64,000 bases of DNA from Oculina patagonica. Lineage: Eukaryota. The notes below the pieces were generated by a model. It ran no database searches and was not told the origin of the DNA. It worked only from the letters and a program-made list of their open reading frames with translations. The stretch covers positions 26,350,001 to 26,414,000 of the forward strand of contig NC_135762.1 of the NCBI RefSeq assembly GCF_052425735.1. The letters are read 5' to 3'. This document shows positions 11,609 to 64,000 of the stretch, piece after piece (the first letter of the stretch is position 1; every line of letters begins with the position of its first letter). A program made the translations under genes and the position numbers.

Positions 11609-12695
11609 CAGATTGTGAAACGGCAGTGGAATCGAACACACCTTTCTGGTGTTTACGATTTCGAGAACTGCCGACTTAAACATGAATAAAACATAATATA
11701 TAATCACTTTATGGTCTTTTATTTATTTCAGGAGCCAACCAGGCAGATCGAACCCTCTGACCTCGCGTGAAAGCGGAAGTTGTGCCGATATGACAAACAT
11801 TCGGTGTTGCATCGATTGCTAGTGTATGCGATGTGGTACGCTGGATAAAATAATTTCGGATACTCCGTTCATGGACTTGAACATTTCAAAAATACCTCAT
11901 TGGAAATATGGTCATGTTTTTCTACACAGCATATTTTGTACCAGAGGATACGGGGGACGTAGACTTGTGGGTATTAAATTCGTGAATTTATAACCGACTT
12001 GTGGGTGCCTTGCGTGACACCCATGTCACGGTCTCGGACGGGGAAGCCAGTGGTGTTCAAATAACGCGCGTTCTTTTCTTTACTCTGAAAGAACAATTTT
12101 TCTGAAGTCCTTTTACTCGTTTGATCGCGCAAGAGCGAAAAACACGGTTCCACTTCAGGATTTCGGAAAAGAAAAACGTTGATAATCAATCTTTAGTCTT
12201 TTTCCCTTTAATGCTACTTGTTACTCGCTGCCCATTGTTACTCGTTATTTGCTTGTCGACACGCCCTACAGGCTCGTCAAAATACTGGGGAAGGGGAAGG
12301 ATATAAGATATATTTCCTCCTCATCACGGTAGACTATGCAGGGTCCCTGCACAGGCAGACAATCTGTGTTTGGGGCCGCGTGACGTAAGCGTCACGGTAC
12401 GCGCTATTTGATCTCTATTTGATTTCCCACTACGTGGGCCAGTTGCATGGTCAAATGCCCCACCAGTCGGGGGTGAAATGTCATTGTGAGTCGGTTTTCT
12501 CGTTGAATTGCAGTCGTTTTGCCTACGAGTACGAGCGGATTCGCTAACGACCAGTTACCTTATCGTTAACACTTGGTCTAAACGGACACTCCGGCCCTAT
12601 TTATCAGCCAATTTTAATAGGAAAAGATAGATACGTTGAAACTAGGTACATTACATTAACGTAACCAAATACTAACTTCAAGCGCTTGAGCTCGC

Positions 12696-21523: not shown

Positions 21524-23737
21524 TTATTTAAGGACATATATTTTTTTCGCTTTGTAATCTGTAACCAAAATGCGACCATCCGGTGTTGTAGCTATGTATG
21601 CTGGGTCTTTTAGTCCAGCAACACTTTTGCCAGTAAAACAACCATCCACTGTAAACTGCTGAATGCGACTATTGTCTCTGTCACATACAAGAAGATTGTA
21701 ACGATCGTTATGTTTATAAACACACAAACCCCAAGGATAGGCGAACTGTCCGTTGGCCTTGCCTTTTTCTCCAATCTTGTACAAAAACTTCCCTGAACTG
21801 TCAAATACTTTCAAACAATGGTTCCTACAGTCAGGTACAATGAACATATTTTTGTGATAAACGCATGCAATGGGTTGGTTGAGCTTTTCTAAGCCGCTAT
21901 CTCCAAATTTAAACACAGATTTACCATCTTTTGTTAAGACCTGGATTCTGTTGTTGTTACAGTCGGCTACAACGACATGTCCTTCACCATCAATGCAGAC
22001 ACTTTCTGGATTCTGAAGCTTGCCCTCTCCTGTCCCGTACGTTCCAAAACTATTCACAAAGTCCCCTGTCTGTACATTAAACTGCTGAATGCGGTGATTT
22101 AAGTCGTCTGCCACCAAAGTCTCGTCATCATTCAGGAATGTGACGCCAGCTGGTTTGTTCAACTGTCCAGGATTATTTCCATAGCAGCCAAGTTTTCGCA
22201 TAAACGTCCCTTCATTGTTAAATGTTAGGATACAGTGTGTTTTATAGTCACATACAGCGATCAGTCCTTTACTGTTAACAGCAATTCCACGTGGCTGATG
22301 AATAATTCCTCCTTGTAAATGTAACTCACCCACAATATCAAGGGGTTGTTCCATTACTTGGACAGTGAAAGGACTCTTAGCAAGTTCGTCGTCATTTATC
22401 TTCACTGTGATGTTGTGGCTGCCTGGTACTTTTGGTATGAATTTCACCAGGAAATTTCCATCTTCTTTTTCATTAATAATCAAACTTTCTTCTTGTTCAG
22501 CGGGTTCCACGAGCACTTCAACGTTAAATTTACTTTGAGCTTCACTCGTCAGTTCTTCTTTAGATGTGTTAGGACAGACCACAAACTCTGCTTCTAAACC
22601 AGCTTGGAAATTTTCAGTTAGTCCTTCTACTTTAGACAGACGTACATCTGTTTCGCTGGTTGCCATGTAACCCAGGCTTAAACTCTCGGGTGCAATAGTC
22701 GAGATAAACTTCAAGAATGAACTAACCGGAAGTGCTGGGACTGGGGTCTTGTTAAGATCTTCGAATCGCTGTTTCAAATTCTCCTTGCTTTGCATAATAT
22801 CTAGGCTTGAGCTTCCTTGAACCAGGCTAATAGCAAACTCAACTGCTTGGTTGATTCGCTTGGTCGAAGACTGCACTTCTTTCTTGACACAGCCTAATTT
22901 CTCCATTCTCGATCCGCGTGTTTTTTTGAGGGCGGTAATGGCCTCTTGCTCGAGTTCTTGAATCTTAGCTATCACTTGTTCTTTTGCTTGGATAACTTCG
23001 CGTATAGCGGCGGTTACATTAGCTTCTAGCTTAGAAGCCGTTTCTTCAAGTTGACGCATCACATCACTGTGAACTTTTATCTTTTCTTTCATCAATTCGA
23101 CGCCCGCCTTGATGATGTTGGCTTTCTCGCGACCAGCTGCTTTTTCAAGTTGATCAAAATTATGATTCTTATGATCAGTGTTTATGCAAATTTGACAAAC
23201 ACAAGTTTGGCATTCAACACAGAAAAACCCGGTTACCTCTTTTTCGTGGTACTGCTGAGAGCAAAAGGATTGTCGCTTTAACAAGGCCTCATAGTCTTGG
23301 GCTTGAAACTGTTTTACTGGCATGACTTTGTGTCCTTCAAACGCAGCGACTCTGAACACTTCATGTGCGTTTAAACAGTCAAGACACAACAATTTTTCAC
23401 AATCAAAGCAGTAGCTGATCTCAGCGTCCTTTCTCTTACAAATACCGCAACTGATTTCGCTTCCACTGCCACTTTGTTGCACAGCAAGAAGACTCAACAA
23501 ACTGTTGTGCAGAAAACTGGTCGGAAAATCATCAAAACGATTTCCTTCAGGGATGCCAACTTCTTCCTGACACTGAGGGCAACGAAATTTGCCTTGTCTT
23601 TGGCTGGTTAATGCGTATTTCTCCAAGCACTCACAACAGAAGGTATGAAGACAAGTTATTGTCTTGGGTTTGGTGTAAGTATCCAAACAGATCGAACAAG
23701 TAACTTGTTTTTTGAGGTTATTCAAGAGAGACTCCAT
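21524..23737 (-). CDS. TRIM-NHL E3 ligase, copy 2
   Basis: Intact ORF, ~99% identical to copy 1, with one extra Ile codon. Confidence 0.92.
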   Translation of the reverse strand: MESLLNNLKKQVTCSICLDTYTKPKTITCLHTFCCECLEKYALTSQRQGKFRCPQCQEEVGIPEGNRFDDFPTSFLHNSLLSLLAVQQSGSGSEISCGICKRKDAEISYCFDCEKLLCLDCLNAHEVFRVAAFEGHKVMPVKQFQAQDYEALLKRQSFCSQQYHEKEVTGFFCVECQTCVCQICINTDHKNHNFDQLEKAAGREKANIIKAGVELMKEKIKVHSDVMRQLEETASKLEANVTAAIREVIQAKEQVIAKIQELEQEAITALKKTRGSRMEKLGCVKKEVQSSTKRINQAVEFAISLVQGSSSLDIMQSKENLKQRFEDLNKTPVPALPVSSFLKFISTIAPESLSLGYMATSETDVRLSKVEGLTENFQAGLEAEFVVCPNTSKEELTSEAQSKFNVEVLVEPAEQEESLIINEKEDGNFLVKFIPKVPGSHNITVKINDDELAKSPFTVQVMEQPLDIVGELHLQGGIIHQPRGIAVNSKGLIAVCDYKTHCILTFNNEGTFMRKLGCYGNNPGQLNKPAGVTFLNDDETLVADDLNHRIQQFNVQTGDFVNSFGTYGTGEGKLQNPESVCIDGEGHVVVADCNNNRIQVLTKDGKSVFKFGDSGLEKLNQPIACVYHKNMFIVPDCRNHCLKVFDSSGKFLYKIGEKGKANGQFAYPWGLCVYKHNDRYNLLVCDRDNSRIQQFTVDGCFTGKSVAGLKDPAYIATTPDGRILVTDYKAKKIYVLK

Positions 23738-26700
23738 CAGATTGTGAAACGGCAGTGGAATCGAACACACCTTTCTGGTGTTTACGATTTCGAGAACTGC
23801 CGACTTAAACATGAATAAAACATAATATATAATCACTTTATGGTCTTTTATTTATTTCAGGAGCCAACCAGGCAGATCGAACCCTCTGACCTCGCGTGAA
23901 AGCGGAAGTTGTGCCGATATGACAAACATTCGGTGTTGCATCGATTGCTAGTGTATGCGATGTGGTACGCTGGATAAAATAATTTCGGATACTCCGTTCA
24001 TGGACTTGAACATTTCAAAAATACCTCATTGGAAATATGGTCATGTTTTTCTACACAGCATATTTTGTACCAGAGGATACGGGGGACGTAGACTGGTGGG
24101 TATTAAATTCGTGAATTTATAACCGACTTGTGGGTGCCTTGCGTGACACCCATGTCACGGTCTCGGACGGGGAAGCCAGTGGTGTTCAAATAACGCGCGT
24201 TCTTTTCTTTACTCTGAAAGAACAATTTTTCTGAAGTCCTTTTACTCGTTTGATCGCGCAAGAGCGAAAAACACGGTTCCACTTCAGGATTTCGGAAAAG
24301 AAAAACGTTGATAATCAATCTTTAGTCTTTTTCCCTTTAATGCTACTTGTTACTCGCTGCCCATTGTTACTCGTTATTTGCTTGTCGACACGCCCTACAG
24401 GCTCGTCAAAATACTGGGGAAGGGGAAGGATATAAGATATATTTCCTCCTCATCACGGTAGACTATGCAGGGTCCCTGCACAGGCAGACAATCTGTGTTT
24501 GGGGCCGCGTGACGTAAGCGTCACGGTACGCGCTATTTGATCTCTATTTGATTTCCCACTACGTGGGCCAGTTGCATGGTCAAATGCCCCACCAGTCGGG
24601 GGTGAAATGTCATTGTGAGTCGGTTTTCTCGTTGAATTGCAGTCGTTTTGCCTACGAGTACGAGCGGATTCGCTAACGACCAGTTACCTTATCGTTAACA
24701 CTTGGTCTAAACGGACACTCCGGCCCTATTTATCAGCCAATTTTAATAGGAAAAGATAGATACGTTGAAACTAGGTACATTACATTAACGTAACCAAATA
24801 CTAACTTCAAGCGCTTGAGCTCGCCCCGGGGGGGGGGGGCACTCAAAAAAGTTTTATACGGGGAGGCTCCGCCCCAAGCTCTTACCCCTTACCCTTTTAT
24901 ATACCATTTTGACAGAAATTGTACCCCTTTCCTATACCTTTTACTGAAAAAAGGTACCCCTTTCATATACCTAAAAGACATGACATAGCCTTAGAACAGG
25001 ACGTTTTCTTGTCATTTTTATGTAGCGCTTAATAAATTAAAATAATACAGCCATAAAGTGCGTCTGTTCGAAATATTTTAATTACAGGCCTTTTAAAAAA
25101 CCTAAATGACGGATTTTTATACCCTTTCATATACCTAAACTTGTGAAATCGCTACCCTTTTATATACCTGAAGCCTGAAAAAGGTACCCCTTTTGTGCGG
25201 AGCCTCCCCGTATAGGCCGTTATATGGAGTACCCCCCCCCCCCCCGGGGAGCTCGCTAGCGCTTTAAATAGTTTATAACACATTTTGTGACAACGATCAT
25301 TCGGTCAAATGCCCGACCATCCGGGCTTCTGTTCGATCAAATTCCCCACTATCTGGGCTTTAGTAGCGGTCAAATGCCCGGGGGTTGCCCGGGGGGGATG
25401 ATCTCGCTTGGAATTGACTGATAAGGAACGTAAATAGTATGTAAACAATACCAGGCAGAGAAATTTTTTTTAGGGATTTATTAGCAATATTTTTTGCACT
25501 AAGCATGTTCAGTAACGAAGTCGGATCAAGATTTAGGATGGTCTTTAGTACATTTTATCTCCTCGACGAATTTTTTAATTTCTGACATGAGTATCGACGA
25601 GTAACTATTTTTCCCATTTTATAATCTCACAATGGTGAAAGTTAGAAACAAGAAACTTCAAGCAGTTAAGAACCGTGGGGTTAATGCTTGACCACCTCTT
25701 TCAGTTCTTTGGCTAGAAAGGTGACAGAGCCGCACAGTAAAAAATCTTTAGAAAAGCAGTCACTTGAGGAACACACAAATCGTGTTTGCGTGAGTTACGG
25801 AGTGTGCTAGTCCAGTCCCTGAACTCTCCCTACCCCCGCCCTACATAGGGGGCTGAACCCAGGCGCGCGAAGAGAGAGTTCAGGATAACTTGCATCAAAT
25901 CTTGCGTGACCGTCACCAAGGAGCCGGCTGGGCCGCGTGGGTCTGCCACGATTTACCGACAAAACGACAAAAGAAAAAACGCGGTCCAGATTATGAACCG
26001 GCTTCTCACGGTTAAAAAGTCAATGTGGGAAGATTTTCGCGCGATCGTTCTTAATGATTCTGGAGTTAGTGTTAAAGCACGTGCAAACTCACGCCGAAAC
26101 CAATTGTGACTAAGCTTGTGTAGTGCTCCTCTCGTGGAGTGGGTTTAGCATAGCGACTCGAAAGTTACTCGTTTGCGGGTTGTAGAGAGAAACTGGGTGT
26201 CAGCCGGGAGGGGAAAAACAAGTACACGAGAAAATCGGCATGACGGAAGACTACAAGAACTGACCGACTTTCATCGCGCTAAATTTACCCGGTTTACTTT
26301 GTCTCGTCCCAACTAGTTATATAGCTTGCGCGGTGATATAGACTGAAGAGGTATAAGGGAAATTCCTCGGAACTACTGGGCGAAATAATTTTTGGAATAA
26401 CCATTTTCGCCTCAGGGAAACAGATTTTAGCATCCTCAGAACCAGAGAATAAAGCGAGTCTCTTCGGAAAAGTAATGGTAAAGGTCAAGTCTGCGTACGA
26501 GCCTAGTGGCCAAACGGGCCAGAGCTTATCCCGGTTTCAGTAGCATGAAGCCACTAGGAGTATTTCCAGCCTAGTCCCTAGGCGTTCTCTCTTGTCGTGA
26601 AATCCGCGCGAAGTCTCTCCCGGTGACGTCATGGCTCACAATGGGGTCCAGGTTTGACCGAGCCAAGAACGCCAAGGGACTAGCCTGGAGTATTTCTACT

Positions 26701-27614: not shown

Positions 27615-29825
27615 TTATTTAAGGACATATATTTTTTTCGCTTTGTAATCTGTAACCAAAATGCGACCATCCGGTGTTGTAGCTATGTATGCTGGGTCTT
27701 TTAGTCCAGCAACACTTTTGCCAGTAAAACAACCATCCACTGTAAACTGCTGAATGCGACTATTGTCTCTGTCACATACAAGAAGATTGTAACGATCGTT
27801 ATGTTTATAAACACACAAACCCCAAGGATAGGCGAACTGTCCGTTGGCCTTGCCTTTTTCTCCAATCTTGTACAAAAACTTCCCTGAACTGTCAAATACT
27901 TTCAAACAATGGTTCCTACAGTCAGGTACAATGAACATATTTTTGTGATAAACGCATGCAATGGGTTGGTTGAGCTTTTCTAAGCCGCTATCTCCAAATT
28001 TAAACACAGATTTACCATCTTTTGTTAAGACCTGGATTCTGTTGTTGTTAAAGTCGGCTACAACGACATGTCCTTCACCATCAATGCAGACACTTTCTGG
28101 ATTCTGAAGCTTGCCCTCTCCTGTCCCGTACGTTCCAAAACTATTCACAAAGTCCCCTGTCTGTACATTAAACTGCTGAATGCGGTGATTTAAGTCGTCT
28201 GCCACCAAAGTCTCGTCATCATTCAGGAATGTGACGCCAGCTGGTTTGTTCAACTGTCCAGGATTATTTCCATAGCAGCCAAGTTTTCGCATAAACGTCC
28301 CTTCATTGTTAAATGTTAGGATACAGTGTGTTTTATAGTCACATACAGCGATCAGTCCTTTACTGTTAACAGCAATTCCACGTGGCTGATGAATAATTCC
28401 TCCTTGTAAATGTAACTCACCCACAATATCAAGGGGTTGTTCCATTACTTGGACAGTGAAAGGACTCTTAGCAAGTTCGTCGTCATTTATCTTCACTGTG
28501 ATGTTGTGGCTGCCTGGTACTTTTGGTATGAATTTCACCAGGAAATTTCCATCTTCTTTTTCATTAATAATCAAACTTTCTTCTTGTTCAGCGGGTTCCA
28601 CGAGCACTTCAACGTTAAATTTACTTTGAGCTTCACTCGTCAGTTCTTCTTTAGATGTGTTAGGACAGACCACAAACTCTGCTTCTAAACCAGCTTGGAA
28701 ATTTTCAGTTAGTCCTTCTACTTTAGACAGACGTACATCTGTTTCGCTGGTTGCCATGTAACCCAGGCTTAAACTCTCGGGTGCAATAGTCGAGATAAAC
28801 TTCAAGAATGAACTAACCGGAAGTGCTGGGACTGGGGTCTTGTTAAGATCTTCGAATCGCTGTTTCAAATTCTCCTTGCTTCGCATAATATCTAGGCTTG
28901 AGCTTCCTTGAACCAGGCTAATAGCAAACTCAACTGCTTGGTTGATTCGCTTGGTCGAAGACTGCACTTGTTTCTTGACACAGCCTAATTTCTCCATTCT
29001 CGATCCGCGTGTTTTTTTGAGGGCGGTAATGGCCTCTTGCTCGAGTTCTTGAATCTTAGCTATCACTTGTTCTTTTGCTTGGATAACTTCGCGTATAGCG
29101 GCGGTTACATTAGCTTCTAGCTTAGAAGCCGTTTCTTCAAGTTGACGCATCACATCACTGTGAACTTTTATCTTTTCTTTCATCAATTCGACGCCCGCCT
29201 TGATGTTGGCTTTCTCGCGATCAGCTGCTTTTTCAAGTTGATCAAAATTATGATTCTTATGATCAGTGTTTATGCAAATTTGACAAACACAAGTTTGGCA
29301 TTCAACACAGAAAAACCCGGTTACCTCTTTTTCGTGGTACTGCTGAGAGCAAAAGGATTGTCGCTTTAAGAAGGCCTCGTAGTCTTGGGCTTGAAACTGT
29401 TTTACTGGCATGACTTTGTGTCCTTCAAACGCAGCGACTCTGAACACTTCATGTGCGTTTAAACAGTCAAGACACAACAATTTTTCACAATCAAAGCAGT
29501 AGCTGATCTCAGCGTCCTTTCTCTTACAAATACCGCAACTGATTTCGCTTCCACTGCCACTTTGTTGCACAGCAAGAAGACTCAACAAACTGTTGTGCAG
29601 AAAACTGGTCGGAAAATCATCAAAACGATTTCCTTCAGGGATGCCAACTTCTTCCTGACACTGAGGGCAACGAAATTTGCCTTGTCTTTGGCTGGTTAAT
29701 GCGTATTTCTCCAAGCACTCACAACAGAAGGTATGAAGACAAGTTATTGTCTTGGGTTTGGTGTAAGTATCCAAACAGATCGAACAAGTAACTTGTTTTT
29801 TGAGGTTATTCAAGAGAGACTCCAT
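27615..29825 (-). CDS. TRIM-NHL E3 ligase, copy 3
   Basis: Intact ORF, same domain architecture. Confidence 0.92.
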   Translation of the reverse strand: MESLLNNLKKQVTCSICLDTYTKPKTITCLHTFCCECLEKYALTSQRQGKFRCPQCQEEVGIPEGNRFDDFPTSFLHNSLLSLLAVQQSGSGSEISCGICKRKDAEISYCFDCEKLLCLDCLNAHEVFRVAAFEGHKVMPVKQFQAQDYEAFLKRQSFCSQQYHEKEVTGFFCVECQTCVCQICINTDHKNHNFDQLEKAADREKANIKAGVELMKEKIKVHSDVMRQLEETASKLEANVTAAIREVIQAKEQVIAKIQELEQEAITALKKTRGSRMEKLGCVKKQVQSSTKRINQAVEFAISLVQGSSSLDIMRSKENLKQRFEDLNKTPVPALPVSSFLKFISTIAPESLSLGYMATSETDVRLSKVEGLTENFQAGLEAEFVVCPNTSKEELTSEAQSKFNVEVLVEPAEQEESLIINEKEDGNFLVKFIPKVPGSHNITVKINDDELAKSPFTVQVMEQPLDIVGELHLQGGIIHQPRGIAVNSKGLIAVCDYKTHCILTFNNEGTFMRKLGCYGNNPGQLNKPAGVTFLNDDETLVADDLNHRIQQFNVQTGDFVNSFGTYGTGEGKLQNPESVCIDGEGHVVVADFNNNRIQVLTKDGKSVFKFGDSGLEKLNQPIACVYHKNMFIVPDCRNHCLKVFDSSGKFLYKIGEKGKANGQFAYPWGLCVYKHNDRYNLLVCDRDNSRIQQFTVDGCFTGKSVAGLKDPAYIATTPDGRILVTDYKAKKIYVLK

Positions 29826-32800
29826 CAGATTGTGAAACGGCAGTGGAATCGAACACACCTTTCTGGTGTTTACGATTTCGAGAACTGCCGACTTAAACAT
29901 GAATAAAACATAATATATAATCACTTTATGGTCTTTTATTTATTTCAGGAGCCAACCAGGCAGATCGAACCCTCTGACCTCGCGTGAAAGCGGAAGTTGT
30001 GCCGATATGACAAACATTCGGTGTTGCATCGATTGCTAGTGTATGCGATGTGGTACGCTGGATAAAATAATTTCGGATACTCCGTTCATGGACTTGAACA
30101 TTTCAAAAATACCTCATTGGAAATATGGTCATGTTTTTCTACACAGCATATTTTGTACCAGAGGATACGGGGGACGTAGACTTGTGGGTATTAAATTCGT
30201 GTCCAATATACACCAATAGGACATGAATTTATAACCGACTTGTGGGTGCCTTGCGTGACACCCATGTCACGGTCTCGGACGGGGAAGCCAGTGGTGTTCA
30301 AATAACGCGCGTTCTTTTCTTTACTCTGAAAGAACAATTTTTCTGAAGTCCTTTTACTCGTTTGATCGCGCAAGAGCGAAAAACACGGTTCCACTTCAGG
30401 ATTTCGGAAAAGAAAAACGTTGATAATCAATCTTTAGTCTTTTTCCCTTTAATGCTACTTGTTACTCGCTGCCCATTGTTACTCGTTATTTGCTTGTCGA
30501 CACGCCCTACAGGCTCGTCAAAATACTGGGGAAGGGGAAGGATATAAGATATATTTCCTCCTCATCACGGTAGACTATGCAGGGTCCCTGCACAGGCAGA
30601 CAATCTGTGTTTGGGGCCGCGTGACGTAAGCGTCACGGTACGCGCTATTTGATCTCTATTTGATTTCCCACTACGTGGGCCAGTTGCATGGTCAAATGCC
30701 CCACCAGTCGGGGGTGAAATGTCATTGTGAGTCGGTTTTCTCGTTGAATTGCAGTCGTTTTGCCTACGAGTACGAGCGGATTCGCTAACGACCAGTTACC
30801 TTATCGTTAACACTTGGTCTAAACGGACACTCCGGCCCTATTTATCAGCCAATTTTAATAGGAAAAGATAGATACGTTGAAACTAGGTACATTACATTAA
30901 CGTAACCAAATACTAACTTCAAGCGCTTGAGCTCGCCCCGGGGGGGGGGGGGCACTCAAAAAAGTTTTATACGGGGAAGCTCCGCCCCAAGCTCTTACCC
31001 CTTACCCTTTTATATACCATTTTGACAGAAATTGTACCCCTTTCCTATACCTTTTACTGAAAAAAGGTACCCCTTTCATATACCTAAAAGACATGACATA
31101 GCCTTAGAACAGGACGTTTTCTTGTCATTTTTATGTAGCGCTTAATAAATTAAAATAATACAGCCATAAAGTGCGTCTGTTCGAAATATTTTAATTACAG
31201 GCCTTTTAAAAAACCTAAATGACGGATTTTTATACCCTTTCATATACCTAAACTTGTGAAATCGCTACCCTTTTATATACCTGAAGCCTGAAAAAGGTAC
31301 CCCTTTTGTGCGGAGCCTCCCCGTATAGGCCGTTATATGGAGTACCCCCCCCCCCCCCGGGGAGCTCGCTAGCGCTTTAAATAGTTTATAACACATTTTG
31401 TGACAACGATCATTCGGTCAAATGCCCGACCATCCGGGCTTCTGTTCGATCAAATTCCCCACTATCTGGGCTTTAGTAGCGGTCAAATGCCCGGGGGTTG
31501 CCCGGGGGGGATGATCTCGCTTGGAATTGACTGATAAGGAACGTAAATAGTATGTAAACAATACCAGGCAGAGAAATTTTTTTTAGGGATTTATTAGCAA
31601 TATTTTTTGCACTAAGCATGTTCAGTAACGAAATCGGATCAAGATTTAGGATGGTCTTTAGTACATTTTATCTCCTCGACGAATTTTTTAATTTCTGACA
31701 TGAGTATCGACGAGTAACTATTTTTCCCATTTTATAATCTCACAATGGTGAAAGTTAGAAACAAGAAACTTCAAGCAGTTAAGAACCGTGGGGTTAATGC
31801 TTGACCACCTCTTTCAGTTCTTTGGCTAGAAAGGTGACAGAGCCGCACAGTAAAAAATCTTTAGAAAAGCAGTCACTTGAGGAACACACAAATCGTGTTT
31901 GCGTGAGTTACGGAGTGTGCTAGTCCAGTCCCTGAACTCTCCCTACCCCCGCCCTACATAGGGGGCTGAACCCAGGCGCGCGAAGAGAGAGTTCAGGATA
32001 ACTTGCATCAAATCTTGCGTGACCGTCACCAAGGAGCCGGCTGGGCCGCGTGGGTCTGCCACGATTTACCGACAAAACGACAAAAGAAAAAACGCGGTCC
32101 AGATTATGAACCGGCTTCTCACGGTTAAAAAGTCAATGTGGGAAGATTTTCGCGCGATCGTTCTTAATGATTCTGGAGTTAGTGTTAAAGCACGTGCAAA
32201 CTCACGCCGAAACCAATTGTGACTAAGCTTGTGTAGTGCTCCTCTCGTGGAGTGGGTTTAGCATAGCGACTCGAAAGTTACTCGTTTGCGGGTTGTAGAG
32301 AGAAACTGGGTGTCAGCCGGGAGGGGAAAAACAAGTACACGAGAAAATCGGCATGACGGAAGACTACAAGAACTGACCGACTTTCATCGCGCTAAATTTA
32401 CCCGGTTTACTTTGTCTCGTCCCAACTAGTTATATAGCTTGCGCGGTGATATAGACTGAAGAGGTATAAGGGAAATTCCTCGGAACTACTGGGCGAAATA
32501 ATTTTTGGAATAACCATTTTCGCCTCAGGGAAACAGATTTTAGCATCCTCAGAACCAGAGAATAAAGCGAGTCTCTTCGGAAAAGTAATGGTAAAGGTCA
32601 AGTCTGCGTACGAGCCTAGTGGCCAAACGGGCCAGAGCTTATCCCGGTTTCAGTAGCATGAAGCCACTAGGAGCATTTCCAGCCTAGTCCCTAGGCGTTC
32701 TCTCTTGTCGTGAAATCCGCGCGAAGTCTCTCCCGGTGACGTCATGGCTCACAATGGGGTCCAGGTTTGACCGAGCCAAGAACGCCAAGGGACTAGCCTG

Positions 32801-33728: not shown

Positions 33729-35939
33729 TTATTTAAGGACATATATTTTTTTCGCTTTGTAATCTGTAACCAAAATGCGACCATCCGGTGTTGTAGCTAT
33801 GTATGCTGGGTCTTTTAGTCCAGCAACACTTTTGCCAGTAAAACAACCATCCACTGTAAACTGCTGAATGCGACAATTGTCTCTGTCACATACAAGAAGA
33901 TTGTAACGATCGTTATGTTTATAAACACACAAACCCCAAGGATAGGCGAACTGTCCGTTGGCCTTGCCTTTTTCTCCAATCTTGTACAAAAACTTCCCTG
34001 AACTGTCAAATACTTTCAAACAATGGTTCCTACAGTCAGATACAATGAACATATTTTTGTGATAAACGCATGCAATGGGTTGGTTGAGCTTTTCTAAGCC
34101 GCTATCTCCAAATTTAAACACAGATTTACCATCTTTTGTTAAGACCTGGATTCTGTTGTTGTTAAAGTCGGCTACAACGACATGTCCTTCACCATCAATG
34201 CAGACACTTTCTGGATTCTGAAGCTTGCCCTCTCCTGTCCCGTACGTTCCAAAACTATTCACAAAGTCCCCTGTCTGTACATTAAACTGCTGAATGCGGT
34301 GATTTAAGTCGTCTGCCACCAAAGTCTCGTCATCATTCAGGAATGTGACGCCAGCTGGTTTGTTCAACTGTCCAGGATTATTTCCATAGCAGCCAAGTTT
34401 TCGCATAAACGTCCCTTCATTGTTAAATGTTAGGATACAGTGTGTTTTATAGTCACATACAGCGATCAGTCCTTTACTGTTAACAGCAATTCCACGTGGC
34501 TGATGAATAATTCCTCCTTGTAAATGTAACTCACCCACAATATCAAGGGGTTGTTCCATTACTTGGACAGTGAAAGGACTCTTAGCAAGTTCGTCGTCAT
34601 TTATCTTCACTGTGATGTTGTGGCTGCCTGGTACTTTTGGTATGAATTTCACCAGGAAATTTCCATCTTCTTTTTCATTAATAATCAAACTTTCTTCTTG
34701 TTCAGCGGGTTCCACGAGCACTTCAACGTTAAATTTACTTTGAGCTTCACTCGTCAGTTCTTCTTTAGATGTGTTAGGACAGACCACAAACTCTGCTTCT
34801 AAACCAGCTTGGAAATTTTCAGTTAGTCCTTCTACTTTAGACAGACGTAGATCTGTTTCGCTGGTTGCCATGTAACCCAGGCTTAAACTCTCGGGTGCAA
34901 TAGTCGAGATAAACTTCAAGAATGAACTAACCGGAAGTGCTGGGACTGGGGTCTTGTTAAGATCTTCGAATCGCTGTTTCAAATTCTCCTTGCTTTGCAT
35001 AATATCTAGGCTTGAGCTTCCTTGAACCAGGCTAATAGCAAACTCAACTGCTTGGTTGATTCGCTTGGTCGAAGACTGCACTTGTTTCTTGACACAGCCT
35101 AATTTCTCCATTCTCGATCCGCGTGTTTTTTTGAGGGCGGTAATGGCCTCTTGCTCGAGTTCTTGAATCTTAGCTATCACTTGTTCTTTTGCTTGGATAA
35201 CTTCGCGTATAGCGGCGGTTACATTAGCTTCTAGCTTAGAAGCCGTTTCTTCAAGTTGACGCATCACATCACTGTGAACTTTTATCTTTTCTTTCATCAA
35301 TTCGACGCCCGCCTTGATGTTGGCTTTCTCGCGATCAGCTGCTTTTTCAAGTTGATCAAAATTATGATTCTTATGATCAGTGTTTATGCAAATTTGACAA
35401 ACACAAGTTTGGCATTCAACACAGAAAAACCCGGTTACCTCTTTTTCGTGGTACTGCTGAGAGCAAAAGGATTGTCGCTTTAAGAAGGCCTCGTAGTCTT
35501 GGGCTTGAAACTGTTTTACTGGCATGACTTTGTGTCCTTCAAACGCAGCGACTCTGAACACTTCATGTGCGTTTAAACAGTCAAGACACAACAATTTTTC
35601 ACAATCAAAGCAGTAGCTGATCTCAGCGTCCTTTCTCTTACAAATACCGCAACTGATTTCGCTTCCACTGCCACTTTGTTGCACAGCAAGAAGACTCAAC
35701 AAACTGTTGTGCAGAAAACTGGTCGGAAAATCATCAAAACGATTTCCTTCAGGGATGCCAACTTCTTCCTGACACTGAGGGCAACGAAATTTGCCTTGTC
35801 TTTGGCTGGTTAATGCGTATTTCTCCAAGCACTCACAACAGAAGGTATGAAGACAAGTTATTGTCTTGGGTTTGGTGTAAGTATCCAAACAGATCGAACA
35901 AGTAACTTGTTTTTTGAGGTTATTCAAGAGAGACTCCAT
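33729..35939 (-). CDS. TRIM-NHL E3 ligase, copy 4
   Basis: Intact ORF, same domain architecture. Confidence 0.92.
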   Translation of the reverse strand: MESLLNNLKKQVTCSICLDTYTKPKTITCLHTFCCECLEKYALTSQRQGKFRCPQCQEEVGIPEGNRFDDFPTSFLHNSLLSLLAVQQSGSGSEISCGICKRKDAEISYCFDCEKLLCLDCLNAHEVFRVAAFEGHKVMPVKQFQAQDYEAFLKRQSFCSQQYHEKEVTGFFCVECQTCVCQICINTDHKNHNFDQLEKAADREKANIKAGVELMKEKIKVHSDVMRQLEETASKLEANVTAAIREVIQAKEQVIAKIQELEQEAITALKKTRGSRMEKLGCVKKQVQSSTKRINQAVEFAISLVQGSSSLDIMQSKENLKQRFEDLNKTPVPALPVSSFLKFISTIAPESLSLGYMATSETDLRLSKVEGLTENFQAGLEAEFVVCPNTSKEELTSEAQSKFNVEVLVEPAEQEESLIINEKEDGNFLVKFIPKVPGSHNITVKINDDELAKSPFTVQVMEQPLDIVGELHLQGGIIHQPRGIAVNSKGLIAVCDYKTHCILTFNNEGTFMRKLGCYGNNPGQLNKPAGVTFLNDDETLVADDLNHRIQQFNVQTGDFVNSFGTYGTGEGKLQNPESVCIDGEGHVVVADFNNNRIQVLTKDGKSVFKFGDSGLEKLNQPIACVYHKNMFIVSDCRNHCLKVFDSSGKFLYKIGEKGKANGQFAYPWGLCVYKHNDRYNLLVCDRDNCRIQQFTVDGCFTGKSVAGLKDPAYIATTPDGRILVTDYKAKKIYVLK

Positions 35940-38900
35940 CAGATTGTGAAACGGCAGTGGAATCGAACACACCTTTCTGGTGTTTACGATTTCGAGAACT
36001 GCCGACTTAAACATGAATAAAACATAATATATAATCACTTTATGGTCTTTTATTTATTTCAGGAGCCAACCAGGCAGATCGAACCCTCTGACCTCGCGTG
36101 AAAGCGGAAGTTGTGCCGATATGACAAACATTCGGTGTTGCATCGATTGCTAGTGTATGCGATGTGGTACGCTGGATAAAATAATTTCGGATACTCCGTT
36201 CATGGACTTGAACATTTCAAAAATACCTCATTGGAAATATGGTCATGTTTTTCTACACAGCATATTTTGTACCAGAGGATACGGGGGACGTAGACTTGTG
36301 GGTATTAAATTCGTGTCCAATATACACCAATAGGATGAATTTATAACCGACTTGTGGGTGCCTTGCGTGACACCCATGTCACGGTCTCGGACGGGGAAGC
36401 CAGTGGTGTTCAAATAACGCGCGTTCTTTTCTTTACTCTGAAAGAACAATTTTTCTGAAGTCCTTTTACTCGTTTGATCGCGCAAGAGCGAAAAACACGG
36501 TTCCACTTCAGGATTTCGGAAAAGAAAAACGTTGATAATCAATCTTTAGTCTTTTTCCCTTTAATGCTACTTGTTACTCGCTGCCCATTGTTACTCGTTA
36601 TTTGCTTGTCGACACGCCCTACAGGCTCGTCAAAATACTGGGGAAGGGGAAGGATATAAGATATATTTCCTCCTCATCACGGTAGACTATGCAGGGTCCC
36701 TGCACAGGCAGACAATCTGTGTTTGGGGCCGCGTGACGTAAGCGTCACGGTACGCGCTATTTGATCTCTATTTGATTTCCCACTACGTGGGCCAGTTGCA
36801 TGGTCAAATGCCCCACCAGTCGGGGGTGAAATGTCATTGTGAGTCGGTTTTCTCGTTGAATTGCAGTCGTTTTGCCTACGAGTACGAGCGGATTCGCTAA
36901 CGACCAGTTACCTTATCGTTAACACTTGGTCTAAACGGACACTCCGGCCCTATTTATCAGCCAATTTTAATAGGAAAAGATAGATACGTTGAAACTAGGT
37001 ACATTACATTAACGTAACCAAATACTAACTTCAAGCGCTTGAGCTCGCCCCGGGGGGGGGGGGGCACTCAAAAAAGTTTTATACGGGGAGGCTCCGCCCC
37101 AAGCTCTTACCCCTTACCCTTTTATATACCATTTTGACAGAAATTGTACCCCTTTCCTATACCTTTTACTGAAAAAAGGTACCCCTTTCATATACCTAAA
37201 AGACATGACATAGCCTTAGAACAGGACGTTTTCTTGTCATTTTTATGTAGCGCTTAATAAATTAAAATAACACAGCCATAAAGTGCGTCTGTTCGAAATA
37301 TTTTAATTACAGGCCTTTTAAACAACCTAAATGACGGATTTTTATACCCTTTCATATACCTAAACTTGTGAAATCGCTACCCTTTTATATACCTGAAGCC
37401 TGAAAAAGGTACCCCTTTTGTGCGGAGCCTCCCCGTATAGGCCGTTATATGGAGTACCCCCCCCCCCCGGGGAGCTCGCTAGCGCTTTAAATAGTTTATA
37501 ACACATTTTGTGACAACGATCATTCGGTCAAATGCCCGACCATCCGGGCTTCTGTTCGATCAAATTCCCCACTATCTGGGCTTTAGTAGCGGTCAAATGC
37601 CCGGGGGTTGCCCGGGGGGGATGATCTCGCTTGGAATTGACTGATAAGGAACGTAAATAGTATGTAAACAATACCAGGCAGAGAAATTTTTTTTAGGGAT
37701 TTATTAGCAATATTTTTTGCACTAAGCATGTTCAGTAACGAAGTCGGATCAAGATTTAGGATGGTCTTTAGTACATTTTATCTCCTCGACGAATTTTTTA
37801 ATTTCTGACATGAGTATCGACGAGTAACTATTTTTCCCATTTTATAATCTCACAATGGTGAAAGTTAGAAACAAGAAACTTCAAGCAGTTAAGAACCGTG
37901 GGGTTAATGCTTGACCACCTCTTTCAGTTCTTTGGCTAGAAAGGTGACAGAGCCGCACAGTAAAAAATCTTTAGAAAAGCAGTCACTTGAGGAACACACA
38001 AATCGTGTTTGCGTGAGTTACGGAGTGTGCTAGTCCAGTCCCTGAACTCTCCCTACCCCCGCCCTACATAGGGGGCTGAACCCAGGCGCGCGAAGAGAGA
38101 GTTCAGGATAACTTGCATCAAATCTTGCGTGACCGTCACCAAGGAGCCGGCTGGGCCGCGTGGGTCTGCCACGATTTACCGACAAAACGACAAAAGAAAA
38201 AACGCGGTCCAGATTATGAACCGGCTTCTCACGGTTAAAAAGTCAATGTGGGAAGATTTTCGCGCGATCGTTCTTAATGATTCTGGAGTTAGTGTTAAAG
38301 CACGTGCAAACTCACGCCGAAACCAATTGTGACTAAGCTTGTGTAGTGCTCCTCTCGTGGAGTGGGTTTAGCATAGCGACTCGAAAGTTACTCGTTTGCG
38401 GGTTGTAGAGAGAAACTGGGTGTCAGCCGGGAGGGGAAAAACAAGTACACGAGAAAATCGGCATGACGGAAGACTACAAGAACTGACCGACTTTCATCGC
38501 GCTAAATTTACCCGGTTTACTTTGTCTCGTCCCAACTAGTTATATAGCTTGCGCGGTGATATAGACTGAAGAGGTATAAGGGAAATTCCTCGGAACTACT
38601 GGGCGAAATAATTTTTGGAATAACCATTTTCGCCTCAGGGAAACAGACTTTAGCATCCTCAGAACCAGAGAATAAAGCGAGTCTCTTCGGAAAAGTAATG
38701 GTAAAGGTCAAGTCTGCGTACGAGCCTAGTGGCCAAACGGGCCAGAGCTTATCCCGGTTTCAGTAGCATGAAGCCACTAGGAGTATTTCCAGCCTAGTCC
38801 CTAGGCGTTCTCTCTTGTCGTGAAATCCGCGCGAAGTCTCTCCCGGTGACGTCATGGCTCACAATGGGGTCCAGGTTTGACCGAGCCAAGAACGCCAAGG

Positions 38901-39745: not shown

Positions 39746-55459
<15,714 letters not shown>

Positions 55460-61507: not shown

Positions 61508-62800
61508 TTTATTTCATAGGTACTGAGATTTACTCACGAAAATCGTAGGGAGTAAAAATCGTACTGATTCAGAGCTTAGCCAATCAGGAGCACGAACGAC
61601 AAAATTTCACTGTGAAAAAATATCGTTCGTACAATGAGCAACGCGAACGACTAATTTTCACTGGTAATGAATGAACGTATTGAAGGAAACGTCATCCCAC
61701 AGCCGTTGCCGACAAGAAAACCCGCGCTTTGAAAAATGGCCGAGGGAAGGTTTGCTTCTGTTTCTTCAGTTGAAGAATTTATTTTAGAACAGGAAAACAA
61801 AAACACCGCTCAAAAAACTGAACGAGATGTAAAATTGCTTGAAAGATTTTTGATAACGAAGAACGAAGACAGAAAAATAGAAGATATTCCGGCTGTTAAG
61901 CTGAATGAATACATCAGCCAATTCATCATTGCCGTCCGCACCAAAGATGGAAATAAATACGAGCCGACTTCTCTTAGAAGTTTAGTGGCTAGCTTCGAAA
62001 GACATCTGAAGAAAAAGAGCTATTCTGTAAGCATAATCAACGACTTGGTGTTTGAGAAAACCAGGAAAGTTCTGCAGTCTAAACAAAAGCAGCTAAAAAA
62101 GCAAGGAAAAGGAAATAAACCGAAAGCGTCGGTAGCTTTGACAAGCGAAGAGTTGAAAATATTGTGCGAGAAGGGTTTGCTCGGTATGTGTAGTCCCGAG
62201 GCACTTCTAAACACGCTCTGGCTAAACAACACTCTTCACTTCGGACTCCGTGGGTGCCAAGAACATCGTGATATGTGCTGGGGAGTAAGCTACTGAAAAC
62301 GGCAAGCGGAGTCAAGTACTTGGAGTTCAATGAAAGACAAACAAATACTAGAACGGGATCAGACTGCAGCGATGTCAGAACCGTACCGCCGAAAATGTTT
62401 GCGACCGACGGAAAATAAATTGACTGAAATAAATTTGATTTATCTTCTTGACATAACTTTGTTATTGATGGCTTCCTTTATTAACAGACATTTGACTTAA
62501 TTAAAAAATTTTGAATGCTGCAGATCTTTGATTTACTCAGTTGTTGAGCAATTGAATGGTTTTACAGTGTCATTTATTTTTGCAAATAAATTTGTCTACT
62601 CAGTAGCACGGAAAAGAAAATCTCAGTACCTATGAAATAAACATATTACAGCATGGAAAATGCTTTGTACGATTTTAATTCACTCGTTGATACGTATCAG
62701 AAAACTCACTCGTTCGCTACGCTCACTCGTTCGTTTTCTGACACTACTCAACTCGTGAATAAAAATCGTACGCGCGCATTTTCCATGAAGTAATCTCTAT
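61508..62800 (+). mobile_element. Internally deleted Crypton-like (tyrosine recombinase) DNA transposon; left boundary approximate
   Basis: Contains a DUF3504-type ORF; 24-bp inverted repeat 61508-61531 vs 62618-62641; long terminal hairpin 62680-62758. Confidence 0.65.
61736..62418 (+). pseudogene. Crypton-type tyrosine recombinase fragment (KIAA1958/ZMYM/QRICH1-like DUF3504), frameshifted and truncated
   Basis: NKNTAQKT, F...VRTKDG.KYEPTSLRS, LQSKQKQLKKQGKGNKP, HFGLRGCQEHR. After a frameshift near 62285 it continues KLLKTASGVKYLEFNERQTNTRTG...PKMFA and then stops, before the C-terminal H-x-x-R and Tyr. Confidence 0.8.
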
Positions 62801-62862
62801 TTATACCTATATGATAATGCAAATGCGGCCTTACACTACTGAAGACCTGAAAAAAATTTTCA

Positions 62863-62935
62863 GGCTCTGAGCGGGAGTCGAACCCACGACCTTTGCGTTG
62901 CCAGTGCAATGCTCTACCACTGAGCTATCAAAGCC
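62863..62935 (-). tRNA. tRNA-like cloverleaf (anticodon GGC), repeat-borne, probably not a translational tRNA
   Basis: Reverse complement of 63181-63253. Confidence 0.4.
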
Positions 62936-63180
62936 ACATGAGAGCGGTCGTATATGGGTAATCCCTTTATGGTGGACATGATACTCGGCCCAAGTATATG
63001 TGAAAAAAGAAGTGTGTCCAGCAGTAGCAATGAAATATATATATGATAATGCAAATGCGGCCTTACACTACTGAAGACCTGAAAAAAATTTTCAGGCTCT
63101 GAGCGGGAGTCGAACCCATATATTGGGCCGAGTATCATGTCCACCATAAAGGGATTACCCATATACGACCGCTCTCATGT

Positions 63181-63253
63181 GGCTTTGATAGCTCAGTGGT
63201 AGAGCATTGCACTGGCAACGCAAAGGTCGTGGGTTCGACTCCCGCTCAGAGCC
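63181..63253 (+). tRNA. tRNA-like cloverleaf (anticodon GGC, nominally Ala), repeat-borne
   Basis: G-GCTTTGA TA GCTC AGTGGTA GAGC A TTGCA CTGGCAA CGCAA AGGTC GTGGG TTCGACT CCCGC TCAGAGC C. All stems pair except one A:C; lacks the G3:U70 Ala determinant. Confidence 0.45.
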
Positions 63254-63415
63254 TGAAAATTTTTTTCAGGTCTTCAGTAGTGTAAGGCCGCATTTGCATT
63301 ATCATATATATATTTCATTGCTACTGCTGGACACACATTCATTTATTTCACATATACTTGGGCCGAGTATCATGTCCACCATAAAGGGATTACCCATATA
63401 CGACCGCTCTCATGT

Positions 63416-63488
63416 GGCTTTGATAGCTCAGTGGTAGAGCATTGCACTGGCAACGCAAAGGTCGTGGGTTCGACTCCCGCTCAGAGCC
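63416..63488 (+). tRNA. tRNA-like cloverleaf, second direct copy
   Basis: Identical to 63181-63253. Confidence 0.4.
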
Positions 63489-63650
63489 TGAAAATTTTTT
63501 TCAGGTCTTCAGTAGTGTAAGGCCGCATTTGCATTATCATATATATATTTCATTGCTACTGCTGGACACACATTCATTTATTTCACATATACTTGGGCCG
63601 AGTATCATGTCCACCATAAAGGGATTACCCATATACGACCGCTCTCATGT

Positions 63651-63723
63651 GGCTTTGATAGCTCAGTGGTAGAGCATTGCACTGGCAACGCAAAGGTCGT
63701 GGGTTCGACTCCCGCTCAGAGCC
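63651..63723 (+). tRNA. tRNA-like cloverleaf, third direct copy
   Basis: Identical to 63181-63253. Confidence 0.4.
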
Positions 63724-64000
63724 TGAAAATTTTTTTCAGGTCTTCAGTAGTGTAAGGCCGCATTTGCATTATCATATATATATTTCATTGCTACTGCTGG
63801 ACACACATTCATTTATTTCTATTTATACCATTTTAGACATTTTTAGCGCCGAACGTTCCAGCTTCGGCACGTTTAACTTTAAGCCTAACTGAGTTTGGAG
63901 GACCAGAAGAGGAAGAAATCACAATTACAAAAGTTTGAGCTTGATATCATCGGTGAAACAAGTTGTGATTGAATCTTTTTTCCGTTAACAGGAACATTTA

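What the first reader, a model, noticed from the sequence alone, without database searches (positions are those of the whole stretch)
62796..63829. Retrozyme-like concatemeric retroelement carrying a tRNA mimic instead of a recognisable ribozyme
Seen: one insertion bounded by a 12-bp TSD holds three identical 235-bp units plus ~1.3 units in the opposite orientation. The two blocks meet head-to-head with tRNA-sense 3' ends pointing outward. There is no poly(A) tail and no real ORF. The tRNA-like module is internal (~64 nt into the unit) and is followed by a hairpin containing T7 (CCTGAAAA-TTT-TTTTCAGG). Known: tandem units plus an inverted truncated copy are typical of Penelope-like elements and twin-primed TPRT; metazoan non-LTR retrozymes are short tandem units processed by hammerheads; standard SINEs begin at the tRNA head and are monomeric. 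Inference: this is a non-autonomous element copied from a multimeric or circular RNA, or by repeated template jumping. The cloverleaf may act as a processing or RT-recruitment signal (RNase P/Z, compare mascRNA) rather than only as a Pol III promoter, since a simple Pol III transcript would lose the leader and stop at T7.
Basis: partly seen in the sequence, partly recalled or inferred. Interest (0 to 1): 0.85.

Follow-up and report, generated by a model that had tools for sequence, protein, structure and literature searches.

The report
tRNA-carrying hitchhiker of Penelope retroelements
A short, very young jumping-gene hitchhiker in a coral genome carries a tRNA-like gene in place of the usual self-cutting RNA, and its insertions show the distinctive end marks of Penelope-type copying, making it a natural record of how that poorly understood machinery works.

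Summary
Window 62808-63819 is one insertion: 1.3 inverted plus 3.0 direct 235-bp units, flanked by a 12-bp duplication. Each unit holds a high-scoring tRNA-like cloverleaf followed by a T7 hairpin. No ribozyme was detected.

The family has at least 447 units at roughly 140 estimated loci. I examined 32 insertions:
- All 21 scorable two-arm insertions point their tRNA-sense 3' ends outward.
- Each has one outer end at unit position ~190 and the other at ~226. This is a 36-nt "tail" at exactly one end, the published hallmark of Penelope-like elements (PLEs).
- The tail sits on the shorter arm in 18 of 21.
- Duplications are 12-16 bp and AT-rich. Inner junctions fall at scattered phases.
- Variants within an array are either in every unit of both arms or in a single unit. 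One private variant occurs 12 times, only in its own insertion. So each insertion was copied repeatedly from one unit-length template.

Best reading: a non-autonomous element mobilised by a PLE enzyme, with a retrozyme-like life cycle but no hammerhead. The partner PLE, the RNA species and the cloverleaf's role remain untested. It is a new variant of a known kind. This scan had already flagged related arrays elsewhere in this genome.

The parts
62796..62807 (.). Left copy of the 12-bp target-site duplication TCTATTTATACC. It spans the end of a neighbouring ~300-bp repeat.
62808..63118 (-). Inverted arm of 1.32 units. Its outer (left) end is at unit phase ~190 (start site A, no tail). Its inner end is at phase 108.
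62862..62935 (-). tRNA-like cloverleaf of the inverted arm.
63112..63125 (.). Head-to-head inner junction (…GAACCCA|TATATTGGGCC…) with 2-3 nt of microhomology and a one-base deletion. The junction phase differs at every locus.
63119..63819 (+). Direct arm of ~2.98 identical units. Its outer (right) end is at phase 227 (start site B).
63181..63254 (+). tRNA-like cloverleaf, first of three on the plus strand (the others are at 63416-63489 and 63651-63724). A box TAGCTCAGTGG and B box GGTTCGACTCC are intact. The anticodon loop reads CUGGCAA. There is no G3:U70.
63252..63270 (+). Hairpin CCTGAAAA-TTT-TTTTCAGG with the T7 run (63260-63266), repeated in every unit. It is a formal Pol III terminator. 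Its A/T run length is the main variable site within arrays.
63783..63819 (+). The 36-nt 'tail' (unit phases 191-227), present at this end only.
   Evidence: PMC8557442, PMC11167929
63818..63829 (.). Right copy of the target-site duplication. Its first two bases could equally be the last two bases of the unit.

Best explanation
This is a non-autonomous retroelement mobilised by the reverse transcriptase/GIY-YIG endonuclease of a Penelope-like element.

Shown:
- Insertions are dispersed and very young.
- They are flanked by 12-16-bp AT-rich duplications.
- They consist of two head-to-head arms of tandem units with tRNA-sense 3' ends outward.
- The outer ends fall at two fixed unit positions 36 nt apart (~190 and ~226), one of each per insertion. 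The ~226 end is usually on the shorter arm.
- Inner junctions fall at scattered phases, with 0-8 nt overlap or short filler.
- All units of both arms of an insertion carry the same private variants.

Inferred:
- The enzyme cuts both target strands about 12 bp apart.
- Each 3' end primes cDNA synthesis at one of two internal start sites on a tRNA-sense RNA.
- The main synthesis starts at ~190 and runs long. The opposite-strand synthesis starts at ~226.
- Both copy the same unit-length template many times over. The likeliest route is rolling-circle reverse transcription of a circular monomer; the alternative is repeated realignment on one RNA.
- The two cDNAs are then joined by microhomology.

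The cloverleaf with its A and B boxes and T7 run is a complete Pol III tRNA-type gene. How an RNA that includes the start sites downstream of T7 is made is unknown, and so is what the cloverleaf contributes. The hammerhead that defines retrozymes is absent.
For: - Geometry census. In 21 of 21 scorable two-arm insertions the arrangement is minus-then-plus, with one end at phase 186-199 (median 190) and the other at 219-234 (median 226). Under independent 50:50 choice of site, p = 1e-6. The tail is on the shorter arm in 18 of 21 (p = 0.0015). Six of 8 single-arm insertions end at ~190.
- Duplications. TSD length is 12 bp in 11 cases and 13-16 bp in 9. TSDs are 78% AT against 59% for the window.
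- Independent listing. Four further clusters on C1 and C2 also run minus-then-plus.
- Literature match. PLE insertions are partial tandems with an inverted 5'-truncated copy and a 30-40-bp tail at one end only (PMC8557442, PMC3846280). A purified PLE protein cleaves and extends both strands, prefers AT-rich DNA, and starts reverse transcription at two adjacent internal sites whose spacing equals the tail (PMC11167929).
- Potential partners exist. The genome holds about 860 GIY-YIG candidates, many in minus/plus pairs, including a zinc-finger plus GIY-YIG ORF family.
- Monomer bottleneck. Outside the A/T loop there are 25 array-wide variants, 44 singletons and only 2 partial variants. Mean pairwise difference is 0.87 within arrays and 3.22 between arrays. 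One 25-mer private variant occurs 12 times in the genome, all in one insertion: 11 in the minus arm and 1 in the plus arm.
Against: - No autonomous PLE sharing the start-site region was identified. The two GIY-YIG families I could read show no similarity to the unit. One of them is a helicase plus GIY-YIG ORF, not a PLE.
- No RNA of this family was demonstrated. Only contigs of related units (90-95% alike) were found in coral metatranscriptome libraries, and DNA carry-over cannot be excluded.
- The unit RNA is not unusually structured (z = -1.2), unlike published retrozyme circles.
- The T7 run should stop Pol III before the start sites.
- No known enzyme route to a circle is evident without a ribozyme.
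- The census is biased towards loci with full-length, near-identical units. About 40% of clusters hold one exact tRNA hit and were not inspected.
- A homogeneous parent array missing from this haploid assembly could mimic the private-variant result.
Confidence: 0.7

Rival explanations
1. An ordinary tRNA-derived SINE mobilised by a LINE. The inverted block would come from L1-style twin priming and the tandem units from template jumping.
For: Intact A and B boxes and a T-run, as in Pol III SINEs. TSDs are present. Twin priming is known to give inverted-plus-direct insertions with 3' ends outward.
Against: There is no poly(A) or microsatellite tail. The insertion never begins at the tRNA head. 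The inverted arm's outer end is not at scattered internal sites but at one of two fixed sites, always the one not used at the other end (21 of 21). TSD length is nearly constant at 12 bp. Two-arm structure is the rule, not the exception.
Confidence: 0.08
2. A foldback-type DNA transposon whose long inverted arms are made of tandem subrepeats, moved by a transposase that makes a ~12-bp staggered cut.
For: Head-to-head arms of tandem repeats and a near-constant TSD length resemble foldback elements.
Against: The two termini are never the same: there is a 36-nt extension on one arm only. Arm lengths range from 16 nt to 2.7 kb within one family. Single-arm insertions end at the same phases. Inner junctions show microhomology, filler and snap-back features typical of cDNA joining. 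Arrays are clonal from one unit, which cut-and-paste would not produce.
Confidence: 0.06
3. A local satellite expansion with inversions, or an assembly artefact of inverted tandem repeats, rather than single insertion events.
For: Tandem arrays change length by unequal exchange. Palindromic arrays are hard to assemble. A/T-run length varies between neighbouring units.
Against: There are dozens of dispersed loci on at least 13 large contigs, each with its own TSD and the same end phases. In the window, the duplicated target includes the terminal bases of a different repeat. Almost no intermediate-frequency variants occur within arrays.
Confidence: 0.03

Closest known systems
Non-autonomous derivatives of Penelope-like elements (insertion signature defined for Penelope/Poseidon, Neptune, Naiad/Chlamys)
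   Same: Partial tandems. An inverted 5'-truncated copy placed head-to-head. A 30-40-bp tail at one end only. Short TSDs in AT-rich DNA. Two internal start sites whose spacing equals the tail (PMC8557442, PMC3846280, PMC11167929).
   Different: No sequence link to an autonomous PLE was found. There is no hammerhead. The unit is a complete tRNA-type Pol III gene plus a 160-nt spacer rather than a pLTR fragment.
Metazoan non-LTR retrozymes, including the 220-245-bp coral (Acropora millepora) retrozyme
   Same: Unit length of about 235 bp. Tandem arrays from dimers to tens of units. Low GC. TSDs longer than 4 bp. Presumed dependence on PLEs. Presumed unit-length (circular) RNA template (PMC7229834; bioRxiv 10.64898/2026.07.22.740005).
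   Different: The defining type I hammerhead is absent. By eye the unit shares no sequence with the published Amil224 clone (not aligned by computer). The predicted RNA is not a highly paired rod. It carries a cloverleaf instead.
Schistosome Sm-alpha / Sj-alpha SINE-like elements
   Same: Short repeated elements that tRNA predictors call as thousands of tRNA genes. They combine a tRNA-like Pol III module with retrozyme-type behaviour (PMC2770079).
   Different: Sm-alpha keeps an active hammerhead. The family here has none. PLE end signatures were not reported for Sm-alpha in the papers read.
Classical tRNA-derived SINEs (SINE2)
   Same: tRNA-derived A and B boxes, no coding capacity, dependence on another element's enzymes.
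   Different: Insertions are multimeric and inverted. They do not start at the tRNA head and have no LINE-type tail. A strong terminator sits directly behind the tRNA.

Membership tests
PLE-mobilised (Penelope-type) insertion | Partial tandem arrangement of the inserted unit | tested here: met
   2.4 to 13.8 units per two-arm insertion in the census; an array not fully fetched exceeds 30 units.
PLE-mobilised (Penelope-type) insertion | Inverted 5'-truncated copy head-to-head with the direct copy, 3' ends outward | tested here: met
   21 of 21 scorable two-arm loci run minus-then-plus. Four more clusters do the same.
PLE-mobilised (Penelope-type) insertion | A 30-40-bp tail present at only one end of the insertion | tested here: met
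   Ends at phase ~190 and ~226, one of each in 21 of 21. Matches PMC8557442 and PMC11167929.
PLE-mobilised (Penelope-type) insertion | Short TSD in AT-rich target DNA | tested here: met
   12-16 bp, 78% AT.
PLE-mobilised (Penelope-type) insertion | Sequence shared with an autonomous PLE of the same genome around the start sites or pLTR | tested here: inconclusive
   No similarity to the two GIY-YIG families that could be read.
Non-LTR retrozyme | Type I hammerhead ribozyme in every tandem unit | tested here: not met
   No hammerhead or other self-cleaving family at E<=10 in the window region, nor at gathering score in 8 further loci. The only CUGANGA box (minus strand) is not followed by GAAA after its helix.
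Non-LTR retrozyme | Short tandem units (170-400 nt) of low GC without LTR, PBS or PPT | tested here: met
   235-bp units, no LTR features.
Non-LTR retrozyme | Abundant unit-length circular RNA | not testable with these tools
   Only assembled contigs of related units in RNA libraries were available. One 236-nt permuted contig was seen.
tRNA-derived SINE (SINE2) | tRNA-derived head with A and B boxes at the 5' end of a monomeric insertion | tested here: not met
   The boxes are intact. Insertions are multimers whose inner ends fall at scattered phases, and none of the 32 starts at the tRNA head.
tRNA-derived SINE (SINE2) | LINE-type 3' tail (poly(A), microsatellite or LINE-derived end) | tested here: not met
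   Ends are at fixed internal phases directly abutting the TSD.
Foldback-type DNA transposon | Identical inverted termini | tested here: not met
   The termini differ by the 36-nt tail in every case.
Genuine tRNA gene array | Canonical identity elements and a eukaryotic anticodon set | tested here: not met
   Anticodon GGC without G3:U70, and an A·C mismatch in the anticodon stem. At least 447 copies are embedded in a mobile unit.

The most novel reading that the evidence does not exclude
The cloverleaf replaces the hammerhead. On this reading, host tRNA-processing enzymes (RNase P or RNase Z, plus a ligase) cut multimeric transcripts into unit-length RNAs and circularise them. A dimeric Penelope enzyme then copies one such circle by rolling-circle reverse transcription from two start sites 36 nt apart, one per target strand. 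That would be a protein-dependent, ribozyme-free route to retrozyme-like circles. It would also explain the rule of one tail per insertion.
Probability: 0.15. Interest if true: 0.85.

Novelty: new variant of a known kind. Interest (0 to 1): 0.6.

Why it matters
How Penelope-like elements build their tandem, inverted and tailed insertions is still largely unknown. The only biochemical study I read (one lizard element, PMC11167929) found two internal start sites and cleavage of both strands.

This coral family is a clean natural data set for that question. The insertions are very young, about 99-100% identical in the youngest arrays. The unit is short enough that every end, junction and variant can be read.

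Three regularities emerged here. I did not see them quantified in the papers I read, and each is directly testable:
- Exactly one tail per insertion.
- The tail sits on the shorter arm.
- All units of both arms are clonal copies of one unit-length template.

The family also shows that a hammerhead is not needed for retrozyme-style tandem amplification. It raises the question of what a well-conserved cloverleaf does instead. A U-A to C-G compensatory change in the anticodon stem appears in related units from other corals.

For annotation, at least 447 of these units will be called as tRNA-Ala(GGC) genes by standard predictors.

Tried and rejected
1. Ribozyme search. Rfam at E<=10 on the window region, and at gathering score on 8 loci, found only tRNA. 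A genome-wide Hammerhead_3 search scored 68 of about 80,000 candidates, and its controls did not ring, so it says nothing.

2. Partner PLE. A BLAST of the unit dimer against 12 loci around GIY-YIG hits gave nothing below E 0.37. One of those families is a helicase plus GIY-YIG ORF, not a PLE. Searching with the 95-nt tail region returned only copies of the family itself.

3. RNA evidence. No run on record as RNA holds the family well. Seven coral metatranscriptome runs hold a tenth of the sampled words. When laid, they give contigs 90-95% alike over unit phases ~17-160 (leader, cloverleaf, hairpin) that continue into diverged spacer. These include a 236-nt permuted contig and contigs of about 1.08 kb. 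They come from related units, cannot show ends or strand, and may contain DNA. I use them only as 'not refuted'.

4. Folding. The unit (z = -1.2), the start-site region (z = +0.9 and -0.1) and the cloverleaf plus hairpin (z = -1.2) are not distinguishable from shuffles. No rod-like structure and no clear start-site stem-loop emerged.

5. Empty site. No allelic or paralogous empty site exists in the assembly. The left flank proved to be a repeat, which still helped to confirm the duplication.

6. The published coral retrozyme clone was compared by eye only.

7. Rejected readings: foldback transposon, LINE-driven SINE and satellite or assembly artefact (see rival explanations). Helitron and tyrosine-recombinase elements were also set aside, from general knowledge that neither class makes target-site duplications, whereas TSDs are present here.
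Full report
**1. What is in the window**

- A minus-oriented block at 62808-63118 holds 1.32 units.
- It abuts a plus-oriented block at 63119-63819 holding 2.98 units of a 235-bp repeat. The complete units are 100% identical.
- The whole is bracketed by TCTATTTATACC at 62796-62807 and 63818-63829.
- ARAGORN finds four tRNA-like genes, one on the minus strand and three on the plus strand, with anticodon GGC.
- Rfam's tRNA model scores each at 65.9 bits, as high as real tRNAs. No other family, and in particular no self-cleaving ribozyme, appears even at E<=10.
- Each cloverleaf has textbook A and B boxes (TAGCTCAGTGG, GGTTCGACTCC).
- Six bases after its end comes a T7 run inside the hairpin CCTGAAAA-TTT-TTTTCAGG.
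- The cloverleaf lacks the G3:U70 alanine identity pair and has an A·C mismatch in the anticodon stem. It is a tRNA-shaped module, not a plausible alanine tRNA.

The target duplication is real. The left flank (about 62504-62804) is itself a ~300-bp repeat with at least 35 near-identical copies elsewhere, and those copies end inside the left TSD copy. The right flank is unique in the genome. The last bases of that neighbouring repeat therefore occur twice, once on each side of the 1-kb insert.

**2. The family in the genome**

The window lies on contig C5 of a 529-Mb assembly. Earlier notes of this scan call the organism a coral, and the RNA libraries that share related sequence are coral metatranscriptomes.

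- The unit has at least 315 BLAST matches.
- A 30-nt piece of the cloverleaf has 447 exact matches, 214 forward and 233 reverse, against 0 for the reversed control.
- The first 100 matches fall into about 31 clusters. That suggests roughly 140 loci, of which about 40% have a single exact hit.

I analysed 32 insertions: the window, 11 loci and 20 fetched.

**3. Anatomy of the insertions**

I numbered the unit from window 63358 (TTGGGCC… = phase 1). On that numbering the cloverleaf is 59-131 and the hairpin 130-148.

- All 21 scorable two-arm insertions are minus-then-plus, so the tRNA-sense 3' ends point outward.
- In all 21, one outer end lies at phase 186-199 (median 190, …GCATTATCATATA) and the other at 219-234 (median 226, …CATTTATTTC).
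- The two ends therefore differ by a 36-nt extension that is present at exactly one end. Under independent choice of site this pattern has p of about 1e-6.
- The extended end is on the shorter arm in 18 of 21 (p = 0.0015).
- Six of eight single-arm insertions end at ~190.
- Inner junctions fall at scattered phases. They show 0-8 nt overlap or short filler.
- In one case (L018) the filler is a T24 run plus a 115-nt inverted copy of flanking DNA from about 280 nt downstream.
- TSDs are 12 bp in 11 cases and 13-16 bp in 9. The extra bases are explicable by microhomology with the element ends.
- TSDs are 78% AT against 59% for the window.
- Four further clusters seen only as coordinates are also minus-then-plus.

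**4. Comparison with Penelope-like elements**

Craig et al. (PMC8557442) and Arkhipova et al. (PMC3846280) describe PLE insertions as partial tandems. These often have an adjacent inverted 5'-truncated copy and a 30-40-bp "tail" at only one end.

The 2024 in vitro study of an Anolis PLE (PMC11167929) reports four relevant properties:
- The protein cleaves and extends both DNA strands.
- It prefers AT-rich DNA.
- It starts reverse transcription at two adjacent sites internal to the RNA's 3' end.
- The distance between those sites corresponds to the tail.

Every element of that signature is met here. The genome is rich in potential partners. There are about 860 GIY-YIG candidates, many in close minus/plus pairs, including a family with a C2H2-like finger next to GIY-YIG.

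I could not identify the actual partner. The two families I could read show no similarity to the unit, and one of them is a helicase plus GIY-YIG ORF rather than a PLE.

**5. One template per insertion**

I aligned 140 full-length units and excluded the slippage-prone A/T loop. In arrays of three or more units, variants are either in every unit (25) or in one unit (44). Only 2 are at intermediate frequency. Mean pairwise difference is 0.87 within insertions and 3.22 between insertions.

Both arms of an insertion share the array-wide variants (L004, L011, L035, L036, L040, L041, L050).

The clearest case is the C13 insertion (L047). A 25-mer carrying its private C-to-A change occurs 12 times in the whole assembly. 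Eleven are in its minus arm and one in its plus arm, and there are none elsewhere. Another variant (a CA insertion) defines a subfamily at six loci, and the one of these I inspected unit by unit (L045) carries it in every unit.

A new mutation arises in one unit. Arrays uniform for it therefore require a unit-length bottleneck at transposition. The near absence of mosaics means the same RNA molecule, not a pool, is copied over and over, and by both priming events.

Rolling-circle reverse transcription of a circular monomer is the simplest mechanism. Repeated realignment on one linear RNA is the alternative. A uniform parent array missing from this haploid assembly, or very fast concerted evolution across both arms, cannot be formally excluded. 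Either would have to apply to many arrays.

The variable length of the A/T run between neighbouring units fits polymerase slippage at each pass.

**6. What remains inferred**

No RNA of this family was shown.

- Runs that hold the sequence well are of unknown type.
- Seven coral metatranscriptome runs hold a small share.
- Laid on a dimer, they give contigs 90-95% alike over phases ~17-160 (leader, cloverleaf, hairpin) that run on into diverged spacer.
- These include a 236-nt permuted contig and contigs of about 1.08 kb.
- This shows that related families in other corals conserve the leader-cloverleaf-hairpin block while the start-site region diverges.
- One contig carries a compensatory U26-A42 to C26-G42 change in the anticodon stem.
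- It does not prove transcription.

The T7 run should terminate Pol III before the start sites, so the template needs read-through or another polymerase. Predicted folding is unremarkable. How a circle could form without a ribozyme is open. RNase P and RNase Z leave 5'-phosphate and 3'-hydroxyl ends, which are not substrates for RtcB (established enzymology, from my own knowledge).

**7. Relation to known families and novelty**

By behaviour this is a retrozyme-like, PLE-dependent tandem element.

- It fails the defining hammerhead test, so it is not a retrozyme.
- It is not a SINE in the usual sense: there is no head-first monomer and no LINE tail.
- The nearest precedents are the coral retrozymes of 220-245 bp (PMC7229834), the recent argument that animal retrozymes are PLE derivatives (bioRxiv 10.64898/2026.07.22.740005), and schistosome Sm-alpha, which combines a tRNA-like module with a hammerhead (PMC2770079).
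- Seven full-text searches found no description of hammerhead-less, tRNA-bearing PLE-style arrays. Dfam and Repbase could not be queried.
- This scan has flagged the same or sister families many times elsewhere in this genome. One follow-up there examined a sister family that has both a hammerhead and a tRNA-like module.

I rate it a new variant of a known kind. Its main value is as an unusually legible record of the PLE integration mechanism.

Noticed in passing
window 62504-62804: A ~300-bp repeat with at least 35 copies at 95-100% identity across the genome. It contains a long imperfect hairpin (arms 62645-62663/62776-62794 and 62667-62705/62733-62771). The tRNA element inserted exactly at its 3' end. 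Its class is unknown (MITE- or SINE-like).
   Followed up: partly
window 9398-11707, 21524-23836, 27615-29924, 33729-36038 (all minus strand): Four intronless ~769-aa paralogues with RING, B-box, filamin and NHL repeats (TRIM-NHL type), arranged as a tandem gene cluster.
   Followed up: partly
window 14323-19560 (+): An intact 1745-aa ORF of a BEL/Pao LTR retrotransposon (Peptidase_A17, RVT_1, integrase, DUF1759, DUF5641), sitting inside the TRIM-NHL cluster.
   Followed up: partly
window 61736-62296 (+) and 40857-41711 (-): A 186-aa ORF with QRICH1 and DUF3504 domains lies just upstream of the insertion. A 284-aa open frame matches O-GlcNAc transferase (Glyco_transf_41) and is probably an exon.
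   Followed up: no
L018:1168-1300 (G000:C3, about 11.475 Mb): The inner junction of one insertion holds a T24 run plus a 115-nt inverted copy (99%) of genomic DNA lying about 280 nt beyond the insertion's right end. This suggests a template switch into nearby DNA while the two arms were being joined.
   Followed up: partly
L059-L062 (e.g. G000:C5:25725695-25728916): A 1371-aa open frame present in at least 10 copies with identical scores. It combines a superfamily-1 helicase/AAA domain with a GIY-YIG nuclease. It is not a Penelope element and may be a different, young mobile element.
   Followed up: partly
L040:5800-6100 (G000:C6, about 11.455 Mb): A solitary, diverged relative of the unit with the same layout (leader, cloverleaf with anticodon loop ACCGGUA, T-run hairpin, similar tail). 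This shows that the architecture is old.
   Followed up: partly
L044:2329-2360 and L008:1323-1380: Some insertions start with a very short snap-back palindrome inside the cloverleaf (15 nt inverted, then direct). This recalls the palindromic junctions reported for rotifer Penelope copies.
   Followed up: no
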